Assembly: GCF_001194135.2 (NCBI RefSeq)
Contig: NC_069000.1
Span: 863,307-927,306 of the forward strand
DNA from: Octopus bimaculoides
Taxonomy: Eukaryota
DNA length: 64,000 nt
Direction of reading: 5' to 3'
Shown here: positions 960 to 17,448 of the stretch, piece by piece
Position numbering within the stretch: the first letter of the stretch is position 1
How the letters are laid out: every line of letters starts with the position of its first letter
Program-made: the position numbers and the translations under genes
Notes under the pieces: model-generated
Seen by the model: only the letters and a program-made list of their open reading frames with translations
Databases searched by the model: none
What the model was told of the DNA's origin: nothing

Positions 960-3225
960 AAATGAAACGACAGTACAAGACAATGGAATCAGAAATGAGT
1001 GTGAAGGTACACCTTCTGGAAACCAAACTGGCTTGTTGTAAGCAAAAGTTATGTAAGTACTCCAAGGTTGAATTTAGTTTTGTTTTGGTTCGGAAACAGA
1101 ATTACTTGGCTTTTTCAAATGGTTAACTTTTGTTGCCATATTTCTGTTGATACAGACTTTGAATTAATTTCAAAAACAATGAAAAATTTCGTAAAATAAT
1201 TTCGTTTTTGTTAAGCTTGTGTTTATAGACACACAGCATGAAAGGCAGACGTTAATTGATTACGATAGTGATATATCACCATCATCATCATTTAACATCC
1301 ATTTTCCATGCTAACATGGGCTGGATGGTTTGACATGGAACTGGTAAGAGCCATACCAGGTTCCACAGTGTGTTTTGGCTTGGTTTCTATGGCTGGATGC
1401 CCTTCCTAACATGCCAACCACTTTGCAGAGTGTACCAGGTGCTTTTTACATGACACCTTTGGTTTTAGAATCTCAATTCTGTTGTGGTGGGCAGGTCTTC
1501 TTGAGTCAGCAATGTGCCACACACTCTGCTCCTCTGTCATCTCCTTTGTAAGGGTCAGCCTTTTGAGAATGACCAGCCAGCCAGAGAGATGGACAGATGG
1601 ACAGACTGACAGACAGGCAAGCTAGCAGGCAAACTGACAGACAGACAAATAAATGATAACAGGAGATAACAGTACTGAAAACTTGAGTAAAATTCAAAAC
1701 TGAAGACTCTTTTTCACAGGTGAAACAGAAGCAAAACTGTTGAATTCACAAGAAGAAACAATGCACCATCTTAAAGAAAAACAGAAAGAAATTGATCTTC
1801 TTCACCAGCAGCAAAATTCAATACAGAATTTCTATGAAAAAATAATTCATGTAAGAGCCTCATATTGCCTCATCCTTAATTCTCAGTTTCCTTTTTAATT
1901 AACATGTTGCTATATTTTCAGCCCTCAACTAACATTAACCTCACCCCTATCATATTCTTCTGTCTTCTGTTAACATTAGTTTTACCATTGTTTCTCAAGA
2001 TTTTTCTAATAATAAATTAACTCCGATTTCTTAATATTTTACTAACATTAAACTGTTTCTTATCTTTAATTTTTTCTTCAGATTAAACAATCAGTTTCTA
2101 CTCAGTGTTATACCAGCATTAATTCCCTACTTCTCAATATTCTTTTCACATAAAACTGCCACCAAAAATCTTCTCTGGGTCAAAGAATGAATTTCATGGT
2201 TGTATGTCCTTCATTAAATATGAATGTATTCCTATAAGAGTTTCGTAATGTCTTGGAATACATCCTGGAACACATCTCATTCAACTTCATACAATTCTCT
2301 ACTAAAATTACATTTGTATTTGAATTTTTATCAATTTTTATCTTTTTGTTGAGTCATTAGCAATATGGAGATCATGCAATTGGAAAGAAGGCAACAATTT
2401 CTCCAATAAAAGTCATCCCATTTATTCTGGTAGAGAAAAATAAAAGGAAAACATTTGAAAAAATTGTTGGTTAGAAGTATTCCAACCATAATTATCCTGT
2501 CTTTTCCACAAATAATACATTCAAATTAAAATTATCCAATGTAGTCTTTTTTCCAGAAGCAGTAAGGTGTGATTTGAGTAAATTTGGCTGTTATTTCTTA
2601 AAGCTTTATCTAACACATACAGGCTCCTTTATTAATGTTTTTTGGAAAGGTTATGTTCCTTTATATCAGTTGAGAATGGAACTTCTCTTCAAGTCAGTTG
2701 GAGGACCATCATGGCACATGGCATCTCTTGGGCATTTTAAACCTTTCGTTACCATATTTCTCTTGACTACCTTTATTTCTATTGATTTGAATATGTTGAA
2801 GAATTTAGTAAAATAACTTTCTCTGGCAGAATTGTTAGCATGCCAGACAAAATACTTAGCAGCATTTCATGTTTTTACATTCTGAGTTCAAATTCTGCCT
2901 TTTGCCCTTCCAGGGTCAATGAAATAAGAACTAGTTGAGTACTGGGGTCGATGTAATTGTCTAGCCACTACCACCCCACCCCTGCAAAAAAAATTTCAGG
3001 CTTTGCTCTTATCATAGAAAGGATCGTTGTTATTATTATTATTATTATTATTGTTACATCTTAAATGAAAAACATTTCTTTATTTGTTTATTCCAGGAAG
3101 TTTTTGATGACCTTGTGTTGAAAGTCAATAGAACAAGAGATCATTTGGAAGAACATGGTGTAATGATTCAGGCCAAAAATAAGAAAATACTTCTTGAATT
3201 TGGCTTAAATCCACTTGATTTGTAA
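960..3225 (+). CDS. CCDC153: CCDC153/DRC12-like paralog, 3' part; exons 960-1052, 1720-1850, 3097-3225; 5' exons not found in the window
   Basis: GT-AG exons in consistent phase (93, 131, 129 nt), the same sizes as the last three exons of the minus-strand copy. Translation EMKRQYKTMESEM...FYEKIIH EVFDDLVLKVNRTRDHLEEHGVMIQAKNKKILLEFGLNPLDL*; the FGLxPLDL end matches CCDC153 as recalled. Confidence 0.82.
2818..3030 (+). mobile_element. tRNA-derived SINE with a GCC...GGTC..T.AAAT.AG.AC.AG central domain (Meta-like)
   Basis: CTGGCAGAATTGTTAGCA...GAGTTCAAATTC (A/B-box-like)...GTACTGGGGTCGATGTAATTG. Related copies at about 140-270, 13520-13660 and 56370-56720. Confidence 0.7.
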
Positions 3226-4992
3226 TATTTTTGCCTCAAGATTTTCTGCTCCACAAGGTATGGCTTCATCTTTGTCTTGAGACAATTATATTCTCTTCGA
3301 CAGAAAATGTTTAAAAAGGTTAGTATAAGCAAGCAAGGCTTTAATTAGACACCAAATTGATCCTCTCAATCTTTGTCCATGTAATTCAGTGCTTCTGTCT
3401 GCCTCTAATTTGTTTGTACTTGAATTCCCCACTTGCAAGATTCCCTGCCAAATTCTTTCTTCTCAAAATATCAGAATATCTCTGGAATTGTCTGCTGCTT
3501 ATATCAAAGTGCCATCAGCCATCACACAATTCATTGATTTGTGGTTGTTCAAGAAAAAACATGGCCCACATTGATGTTGCTAGTATCAGAGGGTCTGCAA
3601 ATGACAAGAGCCCAGCCAACGCATTAAGAATATAAAGCAAATAACATCTGACTAGTCTCAGGGATTCGAACCCATTCCTTTTGACCGAACCCTTAAAATC
3701 AAAATGACTGCTATTTCCAGCATAATCAGCAGTCACATAGGGACTTTCTCTCTCCCATTGGTTTAGAGACACCAGATACAAGGGATTATTGACACAAAAA
3801 GGGTCCTTTTTACTATACAAAGAACTGTCCTCACAAAGTAAGCGTAGAACACGTTTCTCAGCCACTCGGCTAGAGTTATGTCCCTTGTTCAGAAACCTCG
3901 CGATAAGCTTTTCCAGACAAAAAAATTTCTTTATGAGCGACTGAACTGCTGCAAATAGAAGCCAAATCGCCATCCTATCACTCTACTATACAAAAAAAAA
4001 TAATAAATAAATAAAATGAGTTGGATGAAACATTGGCTAATGTTGTCCAAGATATACAATGCCTTAAAATAACTTAAATGCATTTGATCACAGATCTACT
4101 CGATCAGGACTGATTTGGGGGTTAAATAAGAATAGAAACAACTATGGCTGTAACAGTATAATCAGATATTATGATAAATACGTTCCTTTGACTGCCTTGA
4201 GAAGCCCTATTTATTTTGTTTGGGGGTTGTTAGAGAGTAAATGTGTCAAAGAAAATCTTGGACCAGGTTGGTTCACCATTCCCATTTGCGTTACGTCCCT
4301 TGCTCGATAATATAACTAAGGCAATCACAAAATTGTCGGTTTAATCACTTTGCTTTTTAAAGTCCATTGTTACAACAAACATAAAATATGTTCCAGCAGA
4401 GCATGGGGGAGGGGTGATGCAATCGACTTAGCCCCCCACCTGAACATGCTGGCCTTGTGCCAAACTTGAAACTATTATTATGACAAACAGAGATATATTT
4501 CCAAATAAAAATACCAACAATCAAAGTAAACATTAAACGATTTACTTCACTTTGAATAATTCAACAATTTACATAAAGGCAGCTGACAGGTGAAGGCTTA
4601 GCTGAGTGCCGGCCATCTTGCTTTGAAGTGAACTCATCAAAAGAGTTGAGTTTGTTATAAAATAATTTGGGAGTGAGATCATATTAATTAAGATGAGATT
4701 GTTTTATATATTGAGTTGAGGCTGTTGTATTTTGAGTGAAAGTAGTCCTTGTGGGTTGAAGTTATTGTATGATGCATTGTGGCTGTCATACATTGAGCTA
4801 AAAGTCATATGTTGAGATCAAATTGTTAAAGTTAGTTTAATACAAGTTGTTGTGGAGGGACGCCCAAGGTTTCAGAAGAAGAGTTCATCTTGAATTGATT
4901 TCAGCTGATATATATACGTTGAGTCACTGTTTCTTGTAAACTGAATGGAGGTGGAAGCATGTCTGAGTTGGAAATCATCTGGTTCTTAGTTT

Positions 4993-16540: not shown

Positions 16541-16571
<31 letters not shown>

Positions 16572-17448
16572 TGAAAGAGAGTGATCGAGGAAAGAGAGAG
16601 AGAGAGACAGGGAGAATGAAAGACATACACAGACTCAACTCCCTATTTCTTAGTTTTTCCCCCAAAACTGGAGGACAAGTGTAACAATACTTACCAATGT
16701 AATCTTTCATGGCATTCAGTTCAACCAGTGATTTCTGAAATTTCTCATCCTTTTCCAGCTTGCCTACAACAACAACAACAACCATTACACGGTTGATCGG
16801 GAACATTTAACTACTTGCAAGAGGACAACTCTATTTCCAGCTAGGACCACACAAACACGAAGAAGAAAAAAAGGCACAGATATCGAAAATAACTGGTGTC
16901 TCAATAGCAAGGTTGACCCAAGTGAAGACGTCTGCATCTGCAGCAGACAAACCCTAGGCTAAAACTGGGCATCGATGTGCACGTTTGCCCCTCTGGAAAT
17001 AACCATTAAATCTCTTCCAAATCACACTCTAACACCCTACCAAAGAATCCATAGGATAGTGTGATCCTGGGTTCCCTGTACATGGGACAAGAGGTCATGG
17101 TTGGGATGCCTTTGATCCCTCGCCTGGCTATTCGATCTGGATAATACCTAGAGTTCAACATTATCGACAGCAACGGCTTATACCTATGAGCCACGGACCA
17201 ACAGAGAGTCTGCTAAAATAACAGCTCAAATCCCTTTGAATCATGTCTTGCTGTCTTAGAAATGATACCTAAAAATTACACATGATAATGAAGGATTAGA
17301 CAGGACTGGGGTGGCCTGGTGTTAAACAGAAACAACAACAGCAACAACTGGCAATATTTTTTAAATCGTAGATAAAAGTAAATAATGTCAAACCGTCTTT
17401 TTTCTTAGTTTTTTTGGCAGTTTTCGTAGATTTCTTCTTAGAAGACAT
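13319..17448 (-). CDS. CCDC153: CCDC153/DRC12 (nexin-dynein regulatory complex subunit), 198 aa; exons 17448-17394, 16763-16695, 15836-15717, 15373-15281, 14610-14480, 13447-13319
   Basis: Six GT-AG exons in consistent phase: MSSKKKSTKTAKKTKKKDGKLEKDEKFQKSLVELNAMKDYIAQRD...DMARQYKTMESEM...YKNILHGALDKLVSKMEISKEQWEKRARMIQAKNKKVFLEFGLNPLDL*. The basic N-terminus, coiled coil and C-terminal motif fit CCDC153. Confidence 0.9.

What the first reader, a model, noticed from the sequence alone, without database searches (positions are those of the whole stretch)
960..17448. Old inverted duplication of a CCDC153-PTPMT1 unit, keeping two open DRC12 paralogs
Seen: the order is CCDC153a(+), PTPMT1(-), PTPMT1 exon-3 relic(+), CCDC153b(-), a mirror image. 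The CCDC153 copies have identical exon sizes (93/131/129 nt) and open frames, but only about 30-60% amino-acid identity per exon by eye. Diverged intron homology is still visible (e.g. AAAA.G.AATTATA.A.AAT.ATTT at about 6415-6440 versus 11760-11790). Inference: an ancient palindromic duplication in which DRC12 kept both copies and the second PTPMT1 decayed. Divergent paralogs could mean tissue-specific (e.g. sperm) axonemal N-DRC variants.
Basis: partly seen in the sequence, partly recalled or inferred. Interest (0 to 1): 0.7.

Follow-up and report, generated by a model that had tools for sequence, protein, structure and literature searches.

The report
Old mirror-image duplication, two DRC12 genes
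In Octopus bimaculoides an ancient mirror-image duplication left two intact but strongly diverged copies of the cilia/flagella gene DRC12 (CCDC153) on either side of PTPMT1, plus a leftover piece of a PTPMT1 exon that is still being overwritten from the working gene. It is real and tidy, but it is an ordinary kind of event and both genes are already annotated.

Summary
The window is Octopus bimaculoides chromosome CM046620.1. A collinear inverted homology chain links about 941-6442 to 15392-11754 and continues 2 kb beyond the window's left edge.

**Genes**
- DRC12b (-, 6 exons, 198 aa) matches RefSeq CCDC153 exactly.
- DRC12a (+) has the 93/131/129-nt exons at 960-1052, 1720-1850 and 3097-3225. 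It is already RefSeq XP_014768016.2 "CCDC153-like".
- Copy a is not truncated. Its exon 1 lies 1.7 kb upstream of the window. Exons 2-3 fall in a 1,032-N gap that abuts window position 1.
- In the gap-free O. vulgaris and O. sinensis assemblies, a is a complete 6-exon gene in the same mirror layout.
- Argonauta also carries an a-type copy, so the duplication predates the Octopus/Argonauta split.

**Assembly gaps**
- Both flagged gaps are harmless: one is in PTPMT1 intron 2, the other in an intergenic microsatellite.

**New here**
- Three short tracts evolve in concert by gene conversion: the 5' promoter region, the end of exon 6 plus 3'UTR, and part of PTPMT1 exon 3.
- Coding exons 4-5 are more diverged (67%) than their intron flanks (77-82%) and carry no indels.
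- So both copies are under selection and have diverged in function.

Tissue specificity is untested. Interest is modest.

The parts
1..6442 (+). Left arm of the inverted duplication, as far as it lies in the window. The arm really begins about 2,030 nt upstream of window position 1.
   Evidence: Collinear inverted HSP chain.
960..1052 (+). DRC12a exon 4 (93 nt, phase 1). The RefSeq CDS of XP_014768016.2 starts at the ATG at 962.
   Evidence: It is 100% aa identical to O. vulgaris and O. sinensis a.
1720..1850 (+). DRC12a exon 5 (131 nt).
3097..3225 (+). DRC12a exon 6 (126 nt plus the TAA stop).
3163..3296 (+). Gene-conversion tract 2, left copy. It covers the last 20 codons of DRC12a, the stop codon and 71 nt of 3'UTR. 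It matches 13381-13248 at 131/134 positions.
   Evidence: Concerted substitutions are shown. The first half of the same exon is only 62% identical.
4993..5115 (-). PTPMT1 exon 4 (including the stop).
6119..6310 (-). PTPMT1 exon 3, which carries the catalytic motif HCKAGRTRS.
6042..6276 (-). Gene-conversion tract 3, live copy. It covers 158 nt of PTPMT1 exon 3 plus 77 nt of intron 3.
   Evidence: 234/234 identical plus one 1-nt indel against 11867-12102.
7080..7483 (.). Assembly gap inside PTPMT1 intron 2, within a repeat-rich insertion.
8866..8946 (-). PTPMT1 exon 2 (in the spacer, not duplicated).
9682..9849 (-). PTPMT1 exon 1 (in the spacer, not duplicated).
10615..10743 (.). Assembly gap in an intergenic GA-rich microsatellite upstream of PTPMT1.
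11754..17700 (-). Right arm of the inverted duplication.
11867..12102 (+). Relic of PTPMT1 exon 3. The exon part is 11867-12024, covering aa 95-147. It has no acceptor site and lacks the 5' 34 nt of the exon. The remaining 78 nt are former intron 3.
   Evidence: The tract boundaries are the same in three species.
13319..13447 (-). DRC12b exon 6.
14480..14610 (-). DRC12b exon 5.
15281..15373 (-). DRC12b exon 4.
15717..15836 (-). DRC12b exon 3.
16695..16763 (-). DRC12b exon 2.
17394..17448 (-). DRC12b exon 1 (ATG at 17448-17446).
17475..17685 (-). Gene-conversion tract 1, in the 5' flank or promoter of DRC12b. It is 209/211 identical to the 5' flank of DRC12a, which lies outside the window at -2014..-1804. 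It contains an RFX X-box-like palindrome at 17618-17630.

Best explanation
**Shown.** This is an ancient inverted (palindromic) segmental duplication in the octopod lineage. The duplicated unit held the whole DRC12/CCDC153 gene with its promoter and, tail-to-tail with it, the 3' half of PTPMT1. The two arms (about 8.4 kb and 6 kb) flank a 5.3-kb spacer that holds the PTPMT1 promoter and exons 1-2.

- Both DRC12 copies survived as intact 6-exon genes. In the O. bimaculoides assembly, exons 2-3 of copy a are hidden by a gap.
- The second PTPMT1 half decayed to a 5'-truncated piece of exon 3.
- The arms have diverged to about 65-80% identity.
- Three short tracts of 134-236 bp are repeatedly homogenised by arm-to-arm gene conversion. 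These are the DRC12 5' flank/promoter, the last 20 codons plus proximal 3'UTR of DRC12, and PTPMT1 exon 3 with its relic.
- The coiled-coil-coding exons of a and b are the most diverged parts of the arms and carry no indels. Selection has therefore preserved both reading frames, and either drove or protected their divergence against conversion.

**Inferred.** DRC12 is a homodimeric coiled coil in the N-DRC linker of Tetrahymena. The octopus paralogs share a concertedly evolving promoter and an identical C-terminal motif. From this, the most likely functional outcome is co-expression in ciliated or flagellated cells, with assembly as an a/b heterodimer replacing the ancestral homodimer (about 35%). 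Use in different axoneme types is the main alternative (about 30%).
For: **The duplication is real**
- Inverted collinear chain with E down to 1e-97. It extends to -2014/17685.

**Gene models**
- The b model equals RefSeq CCDC153 at 100%.
- Copy a equals XP_014768016.2. Its exon 1, MSTKKKSGKTAKKPAKKDG, lies at -1687.
- O. vulgaris a exons 2-3 map into the O. bimaculoides interval occupied by the 1,032-N gap.

**Other species**
- The same layout occurs in O. sinensis and O. vulgaris, with complete a genes. My spliced model matches XP_029647553.1 exactly.
- The NJ tree places the Argonauta copy within the a clade at 99% bootstrap. It places a+b together, to the exclusion of a further cephalopod-like transcript, at 82%.

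**Gene conversion**
- PTPMT1 exon-3 tract: 8 concerted sites against 0 orthology sites between O. bimaculoides and O. vulgaris, with identical tract boundaries in three species.
- 13 concerted sites in the 5' tract and 8 in the exon-6/3'UTR alignment, with none of the orthology pattern inside the tracts.
- Tract lengths differ between lineages.

**Selection on both copies**
- No indel in 353 coding nt, against 22 gap openings in 651 aligned non-coding nt (P about 7e-6).
- Exons 4-5 are 67% identical against 81% for their contiguous flanks (Fisher p=6e-4). The pattern repeats in O. vulgaris.
- Copy a keeps 38/43 hydrophobic-core columns and 36/53 outgroup-invariant columns. Copy b keeps 39/43 and 37-38/53.
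- dN/dS between O. bimaculoides and O. vulgaris is below 1 and similar for a (0.68-0.78) and b (0.52-0.81).
- Exon 4 of a is 98.9% nt identical between species.

**Function of the family**
- DRC12 is a homodimer in the N-DRC linker: PMC10504270.
Against: - dN/dS values of 0.5-0.8 on about 400 nt are weak evidence of constraint. They do not separate relaxed from adaptive evolution.
- Intron identity is measured only on alignable HSPs next to exons, so it is biased upward.
- The 99-100% identity of the tracts in O. bimaculoides comes from a short-read assembly and may be slightly exaggerated. The same tracts are 85-96% identical in O. vulgaris.
- Exons 2-3 of O. bimaculoides a are inferred, not seen.
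- No expression data could be examined, so neither the heterodimer idea nor tissue specificity has any direct test.
- No b-type gene was found near PTPMT1 in Argonauta, so the history there is unresolved.
- The NJ tree uses 116 aa that are partly affected by conversion.
Confidence: 0.82

Rival explanations
1. Copy a is a truncated partial duplicate (exons 4-6 only). On this view it is a pseudogene whose frame is open by chance.
For: - No homolog of exons 1-3 is found in window 1-959.
- RefSeq models only a 116-aa product that starts at an internal Met.
- dN/dS is fairly high.
- The conserved Trp of the QWE motif is lost in a.
Against: - Exon 1 and a 99%-identical promoter tract lie 1.7-2.0 kb upstream of the window.
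- The interval that should hold exons 2-3 is an N gap.
- Complete 6-exon a genes with canonical splice sites exist in O. vulgaris and O. sinensis.
- There is no indel in the coding sequence, despite a non-coding indel rate that predicts about 12.
- Copy a retains ancestral core positions as well as b does.
Confidence: 0.04
2. The mirror structure, or at least its near-identical tracts, is an assembly artefact of the gap-rich short-read O. bimaculoides scaffold.
For: - The scaffold has seven N runs in 64 kb.
- The tracts are 97.8-100% identical over only 134-236 bp.
- Other 100% repeats abut gaps, for example 7572-7798 vs 33846-33620.
Against: - Background arm identity is about 65-80%, far too low for a haplotig or a collapse.
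- The same layout, the same relic and the same tract boundaries occur in two gap-free assemblies of other species.
- Those species carry their own species-specific substitutions shared between the two copies.
Confidence: 0.05
3. The near-identical tracts reflect strong purifying selection on independently conserved functional elements, not gene conversion.
For: - The tracts cover plausibly functional sequence: a promoter with an X-box-like site, the invariant C-terminal motif LEFGLNPLDL (alignment) and a catalytic-site exon.
Against: - Selection alone predicts either identity across species or the orthology pattern. Instead the two copies within a species share substitutions that differ between species: 8, 13 and 8 concerted sites, with 0 orthology sites inside the tracts.
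- The tract in PTPMT1 extends 77 nt into an intron.
- The relic has no acceptor site and no other exons.
- In O. vulgaris the exon-6 tract extends about 40 nt further, with a-type sequence copied into b.
Confidence: 0.05
4. This is the reader's functional idea: a and b are tissue-specific N-DRC variants, for example sperm flagellum versus epithelial cilia, rather than partners in one complex.
For: - The coiled-coil exons are strongly diverged, with exons more diverged than their flanks.
- O. sinensis a has three annotated isoforms.
Against: - The roughly 210-bp 5' tract, including the X-box-like site, is kept 85-99% identical between a and b by conversion. That predicts similar core-promoter activity.
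- No expression data were available to test either way.
Confidence: 0.3

Closest known systems
DRC12 / CCDC153, the N-DRC linker subunit (Tetrahymena Q22RH5; human CCDC153; PMC10504270)
   Same: - Both octopus copies align over their full length with DRC12 of molluscs, nemerteans and hemichordates (E 1e-28 to 1e-34).
- They are about 200 aa long, with a Lys-rich N-terminus, a heptad-hydrophobic pattern and the C-terminal LEFGLNPLD[LI] motif.
   Different: - In every other NCBI-named species in the hit lists but one, DRC12 appears once. Bulinus truncatus shows two proteins on one contig, which I did not follow up.
- Octopods carry two copies that are only 46-49% identical.
- Copy a has lost the conserved Trp of the QWE motif and changed DMTR to EMKR.
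Palindromes or inverted repeats with arm-to-arm gene conversion, such as the human Y-chromosome ampliconic palindromes (own knowledge)
   Same: - Inverted arms lie around a unique spacer.
- Copies evolve in concert, shown by species-specific substitutions shared between the arms.
   Different: - Here conversion is confined to three tracts of 134-236 bp within arms that have otherwise diverged to 65-80%. Y palindrome arms are above 99.9% identical throughout.
- The arms are small, at 6-8 kb.
- The genes are autosomal cilia genes rather than testis-specific amplicons.
Homodimer-to-heterodimer paralog pairs among N-DRC coiled-coil subunits, such as DRC4A/DRC4B in Tetrahymena (PMC10504270)
   Same: A duplicated coiled-coil N-DRC subunit with diverged helices.
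   Different: For octopus DRC12a/b this is only an inference. No interaction, co-expression or structural test was possible here.

Membership tests
DRC12 / CCDC153 | Full-length sequence homology to established DRC12 orthologs. | tested here: met
   - b: 35-41% identity over 84-91% of its length to mollusc and nemertean DRC12 (E 1e-24 to 1e-34).
- a (O. vulgaris model): 37-38% over 86% of its length to Tubulanus, Glandiceps and Ptychodera DRC12 (E 1e-27 to 1e-28).
DRC12 / CCDC153 | A coiled-coil protein of about 200 aa with a basic N-terminal tail and a conserved C-terminal LEFGLNPLD motif. | tested here: met
   Alignment. Hydrophobic-core columns are kept in 38/43 (a) and 39/43 (b) cases.
DRC12 / CCDC153 | A curated domain model hit. 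| tested here: inconclusive
   Pfam-A gave no significant family for a or b. The precomputed Pfam field is also empty for all orthologs, so no model appears to cover this family.
DRC12 / CCDC153 | Location as a dimer in the N-DRC linker of motile axonemes. | not testable with these tools
   Known only from Tetrahymena cryo-EM and cross-linking.
PTPMT1 (DSPc phosphatase), applied to the right-arm fragment 11867-12024 | A complete catalytic domain encoded by a spliceable gene. | tested here: not met
   - Only aa 95-147 of 187 are present.
- There is no acceptor site, the 5' 34 nt of the exon are missing, and no exon 1, 2 or 4 lies on that strand.
- The CX5R motif itself is intact only because the sequence is copied from the live exon.
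PTPMT1, applied to the gene at 9849-4993 (-) | DSPc domain with the CX5R motif and an intact 4-exon CDS. | tested here: met
   - PF00782, E=2.4e-12, on exon 3 alone.
- The spliced CDS equals XP_014768011.1.
Inverted segmental duplication with gene conversion | Collinear homology in inverted orientation around a unique spacer. | tested here: met
Inverted segmental duplication with gene conversion | Concerted evolution: paralogous tracts share lineage-specific substitutions. | tested here: met
Classical near-perfect palindrome (Y-type) | Arm-to-arm identity above 99% along the whole arm. | tested here: not met
   Background identity is 65-80%. Only three short tracts exceed 97%.

The most novel reading that the evidence does not exclude
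The inverted PTPMT1 exon-3 copy may not be a passive relic. On this reading it is a maintained element: a 235-nt perfect reverse complement of a coding exon, 5.6 kb away on the same chromosome.

If it is transcribed, it would pair with PTPMT1 (pre-)mRNA. Transcription could come from read-through from DRC12b or from an upstream PTPMT1 start site. Pairing would make a long double-stranded RNA, acting as an ADAR-editing or antisense-regulatory partner in an animal famous for RNA editing.

The sharp tract boundaries shared by three Octopus species would then reflect function as well as conversion.
Probability: 0.06. Interest if true: 0.6.

Novelty: new member of a known kind. Interest (0 to 1): 0.33.

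Why it matters
**For cilia biology.** Octopods carry two old, strongly diverged DRC12 genes. Nearly every other species in the hit lists shows one, and the protein is a homodimer in the N-DRC linker of Tetrahymena. This gives a natural experiment on whether a homodimeric axonemal coiled coil can become a heterodimer or split between axoneme types.

**For genome evolution.** It is a compact, three-species example of a very old palindrome in which gene conversion persists only in short islands. Those islands are the promoter, the C-terminal motif plus 3'UTR, and one exon against its relic. Meanwhile the coding helices have diverged beyond their own introns. This is a clear picture of selection opposing homogenisation.

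**For annotation.** The O. bimaculoides RefSeq model of copy a (116 aa) is truncated by an assembly gap and should be about 200 aa long. The O. vulgaris 123-aa model is also incomplete.

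Tried and rejected
- **Exons 1-3 of copy a in window 1-959.** Relaxed tblastn found nothing. This is explained by the N gap just upstream.
- **A relic of PTPMT1 exon 4, 1 or 2 in the right arm.** None was found at E<5. The right arm is about 700 nt shorter there.
- **Pfam for DRC12.** No family matched.
- **Rfam on 1-20000.** Nothing found.
- **Look-up of O. sinensis PTPMT1 isoform X3 (P0033).** Not on record. I used cluster member P0095 instead.
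- **End-gap-free global alignments for exon against flank identity.** These slid and over-counted gaps, so I discarded them. I used counts taken on BLAST HSPs instead.
- **A b-type DRC12 or an exon-3 relic within ±10 kb of Argonauta PTPMT1.** None found. I could not search the rest of that genome.
- **Species of transcript P0003.** It is an RNA-seq contig from SRR8281694 and others, and the species could not be identified.
- **The relic as part of the DRC12b 3'UTR.** AATAAA signals lie 370-480 nt after the stop codon, about 730 nt before the relic. It is therefore probably not in the normal mRNA.
- **Structure prediction.** Not attempted. The tool folds monomers only, so it cannot discriminate a/a, b/b and a/b dimers.
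- **Literature.** No paper in the library holds both "CCDC153" and "octopus".

Full report
**1. What the window is**

The 64-kb window has 37.6% G+C and seven N runs. My spliced model of the right-hand gene translates to a 198-aa protein. It is 100% identical to RefSeq [quoted passage not shown] on a 47.9-Mb chromosome.

The locus fetched through the PTPMT1 protein (L001 = CM046620.1:858299-883155) matches the window base for base. It adds 5,008 nt upstream of window position 1.

**2. Checking the observation**

Self-BLAST gives a collinear chain of inverted matches:
- 941-1111 with 15392-15221 (71.5%)
- 1665-2049 with 14663-14280 (74.6%)
- 2922-2977 with 14240-14184
- 3070-3296 with 13474-13248 (84.6%)
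- 4463-4576 with 12972-12844 (70.5%)
- 5897-6276 with 12238-11867 (83.8%, with a 99.6% core)

E-values run from 1e-4 to 1e-97, so this is not chance.

The three exon pairs are exactly 93, 131 and 129 nt in both copies. All have AG acceptors, GT donors, the same phases and open frames. Amino-acid identity is 60%, 28% and 55%.

**3. The gaps flagged by the scan**

PTPMT1 (- strand) has exons 9849-9682, 8946-8866, 6310-6119 and 5115-4993. Spliced, they give exactly XP_014768011.1.

- Gap 7080-7483 lies in intron 2. It sits inside an O. bimaculoides-specific, repeat-rich insertion: 6582-8174 here corresponds to 658 nt in O. vulgaris.
- Gap 10615-10743 lies in an intergenic GA-rich microsatellite. 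Its flanks map to adjacent or overlapping positions in gap-free O. vulgaris.

Neither gap affects an exon, a frame or an arm. A third gap does matter. It is 1,032 N and ends at window position 0.

**4. Copy a is a whole gene, not a 3' fragment**

- In the window only exons 4-6 of a are visible. RefSeq accordingly models a 116-aa product from an internal Met (XP_014768016.2, "CCDC153-like").
- Upstream of the window, at -1687..-1633, lies a 55-nt exon 1 encoding MSTKKKSGKTAKKPAKKDG. It is 79% identical to b and has the same GTTTGAC donor.
- That exon is preceded by a 211-nt tract that is 99% identical to the 5' flank of b.
- In the gap-free O. vulgaris (OX597833.1) and O. sinensis (CM016876.1) assemblies the layout is the same: KIAA1328, DRC12b, inverted exon-3 relic, PTPMT1, inverted DRC12a.
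- There, a has six exons of 55/84(90)/120/93/131/129 nt with canonical splice sites.
- My O. sinensis model matches XP_029647553.1 (205 aa) exactly. UniProt names that protein DRC12.
- O. vulgaris exons 2 and 3 map into the O. bimaculoides interval -1075..265. That is the N gap.

**5. Age of the duplication**

Octopus a and b each have clear orthologs between O. bimaculoides and O. vulgaris (a 91% nt, b 89-90% nt). Paralogs within a species are only 66-73% identical.

Argonauta hians carries, next to PTPMT1, a gene that shares the a-specific states. These are EMKR for DMTR, SVKVH, xKL for ETEL, FD for LD, and loss of the QWE tryptophan.

A neighbour-joining tree of the region encoded by exons 4-6 gives:
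- the a clade including Argonauta, at 99% bootstrap
- the b clade, at 100%
- a+b together, to the exclusion of another cephalopod-like transcript (P0003, species unknown), at 82%

So the duplication predates the Octopus/Argonauta split. It appears to postdate the split from the P0003 lineage. "Ancient" is justified.

In Argonauta, PTPMT1 is inverted relative to a and KIAA1328, and I found no b-type gene or relic within ±10 kb. This is what a flip of the spacer by recombination between the arms would produce, followed by loss or relocation of b. That reconstruction is inference only.

**6. Gene conversion**

Three tracts stand out from a 65-80% background.

| Tract | Coordinates | Identity between arms |
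|---|---|---|
| 1. 5' flank | -2014..-1804 with 17685-17475 | 209/211 |
| 2. End of exon 6 plus 71 nt of 3'UTR | 3163-3296 with 13381-13248 | 131/134 |
| 3. PTPMT1 exon 3 (158 nt) plus 77 nt of intron 3 | 6042-6276 with 12102-11867 | 234/234 plus one 1-nt indel |

The first half of exon 6 is only 62% identical between the arms.

I made four-way alignments of a and b (or live exon and relic) in O. bimaculoides and O. vulgaris. They show substitutions shared by the two copies within a species but differing between species:
- 13 such sites in the 5'-flank alignment
- 8 in the exon-6/3'UTR alignment
- 8 inside the PTPMT1 tract
- no site of the orthology pattern inside any of the three tracts

One example is IQAKNKK in both O. 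bimaculoides proteins against IQARNKK in both O. vulgaris proteins.

O. vulgaris and O. sinensis even have private variants shared by exon and relic. The PTPMT1 tract has the same sharp boundaries in all three species. The 5' boundary is in mid-exon, which is why the relic lacks the acceptor and the first 34 nt.

In O. vulgaris the exon-6 tract extends about 40 nt further, with a-type sequence copied into b. The relic there carries a 12-nt deletion. So conversion events are independent and recurrent, and the relic does decay between them. This is concerted evolution by gene conversion, not independent conservation. The relic is "fresh" only because it is overwritten from the live exon.

**7. 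Selection on the DRC12 copies**

- Within the inter-arm HSPs, coding exons 4 and 5 are 67.7% and 67.2% identical. Their contiguous non-coding flanks are 77-82% identical (151/224 against 263/326, Fisher p=6e-4).
- There are 22 gap openings in 651 aligned non-coding nt and none in 353 coding nt (Poisson P about 7e-6).
- O. vulgaris shows the same pattern for exons 3-6: 60-73% against 68-96%.
- The only length difference in the CDS is an in-frame 15-21-nt extension of exon 2 in a.
- Differences between a and b fall about equally on codon positions 1 and 3 (40/22/37).
- Pairwise dN/dS is 0.33-0.73 between paralogs. Between species it is 0.68-0.78 for a and 0.52-0.81 for b.
- Relative to seven outgroup DRC12 sequences, a keeps hydrophobic-core and invariant columns as well as b does.

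Both copies are therefore maintained genes that encode fast-evolving coiled coils. The helices have diverged more than neighbouring introns. Two explanations fit: adaptive divergence after duplication, or conversions that would re-homogenise the helices are removed by selection while flanks are still exchanged. The data cannot separate these.

**8. Likely function (inferred)**

DRC12/CCDC153 was identified as a homodimeric coiled coil in the N-DRC linker of Tetrahymena cilia (PMC10504270).

The shared 5' tract contains GTTTCTAGGCAAC (GTTGCTAGGCAAC in O. vulgaris a). This is a palindrome of the RFX X-box type, which from my own knowledge is typical of motile-cilia genes. It is the only match in the 64-kb window, against 0.03 expected by chance.

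A promoter kept the same by conversion predicts co-expression. An identical C-terminal motif with diverged helices fits a heterodimer that replaces the homodimer. I rate this at about 35%, tissue-specialised variants at about 30%, and other outcomes for the remainder. No expression or interaction data could be reached with these tools.

**9. Comparison with what is known, and novelty**

- Both genes are already annotated in RefSeq and UniProt as CCDC153(-like)/DRC12.
- No paper in the library mentions CCDC153 together with octopus.
- The phenomenon, an inverted duplication with arm-to-arm conversion and a decayed second copy of a neighbour, is a known kind.
- The particular features are the great age, the restriction of conversion to three 134-236-bp islands, and exons that are more diverged than their flanks.
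- I class it as a new member of a known kind, of modest interest.

**10. Verdict**

- Copy a is complete; its 5' exons lie beyond or under a gap.
- The two flagged gaps are harmless.
- The "identical tracts" are gene-conversion tracts.
- The tissue-specificity idea remains untested.

Noticed in passing
window 1270-1457, 7607-7795, 8634-8795, 20254-20446, 27603-27819, 32715-32889, 33617-33811, 47728-47917, 51754-51852: A dispersed repeat of about 190 bp (SINE-like), 70-82% identical between copies and present on both strands. One copy sits in DRC12a intron 4 and two sit in PTPMT1 intron 2.
   Followed up: no
window 6941-7079 and 7572-7798 vs 34200-34049 and 33846-33620: Both flanks of the gap at 7080-7483 match, in inverted orientation, both flanks of the gap at 33847-33918 (91% and 100%). 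The same repeat element seems to have broken the assembly twice.
   Followed up: partly
window 17618-17630 (- strand); also the 5' flank of DRC12a outside the window: GTTTCTAGGCAAC is an RFX X-box-like palindrome inside the promoter conversion tract. It is the only match in the window (0.03 expected). O. vulgaris a has the perfect palindrome GTTGCTAGGCAAC.
   Followed up: partly
window 48825-51401 (+): An uninterrupted 858-aa ORF encodes a glutamate- and lysine-rich coiled-coil protein, probably one large exon of another gene. It has no Pfam hit.
   Followed up: partly
L007 (Argonauta hians BAAFZT010000030.1) 7932-8390: A tandem array of about seven 64-nt units lies in the intron downstream of exon 5 of the a-type DRC12. 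Each unit repeats the 3' end of exon 5 with its donor site (IQYSYEKLIH|GT...).
   Followed up: no
L006/L007 (Argonauta) vs the Octopus loci: In Argonauta, PTPMT1 is inverted relative to DRC12a and KIAA1328. No b-type gene or exon-3 relic lies within ±10 kb. This is compatible with a spacer flip by recombination between the arms plus loss of b. Two contigs carry the locus.
   Followed up: partly
DRC12 exons 2 and 3 (window 16695-16763, 15717-15836; O. vulgaris a 84 and 120 nt): Both exons are multiples of 3 and all of introns 1-3 are phase 1. Skipping exon 2, exon 3 or both would therefore stay in frame, so an exon 1-to-exon 4 splice is readable in either paralog.
   Followed up: no
O. sinensis PTPMT1 isoform X3 (P0033) and O. 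bimaculoides isoform X2 (P0029): Isoform X3 starts with 50 residues (…WVGWPDRAAPGSNRLVWHSFCGWMSFLIPTTL…). These resemble translations of the SINE-like repeat and suggest a repeat-derived alternative first exon in intron 2. Isoform X2 drops most of exon 2.
   Followed up: no
window 1-165 and 8759-8924, 15863-16141: Long trinucleotide and homopolymer-like runs, (GTA)n/(GGA)n at the window start and (CAT/ATC)n-type runs elsewhere, give spurious long ORFs.
   Followed up: no
window 10055-10240, 14804-14884, 37099-37279, 39962-40028, 41137-41199, 47206-47397, 53430-53530: A second dispersed repeat family of about 180 bp, 72-91% identical between copies. One fragment lies in DRC12b intron 4 and one lies upstream of PTPMT1.
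   Followed up: no
one search hit list: Bulinus truncatus P0021 and P0022, on one 1.96-Mb contig: Two DRC12-like proteins (203 and 193 aa) are annotated on the same contig in this snail. This could be an independent DRC12 duplication outside cephalopods.
   Followed up: no
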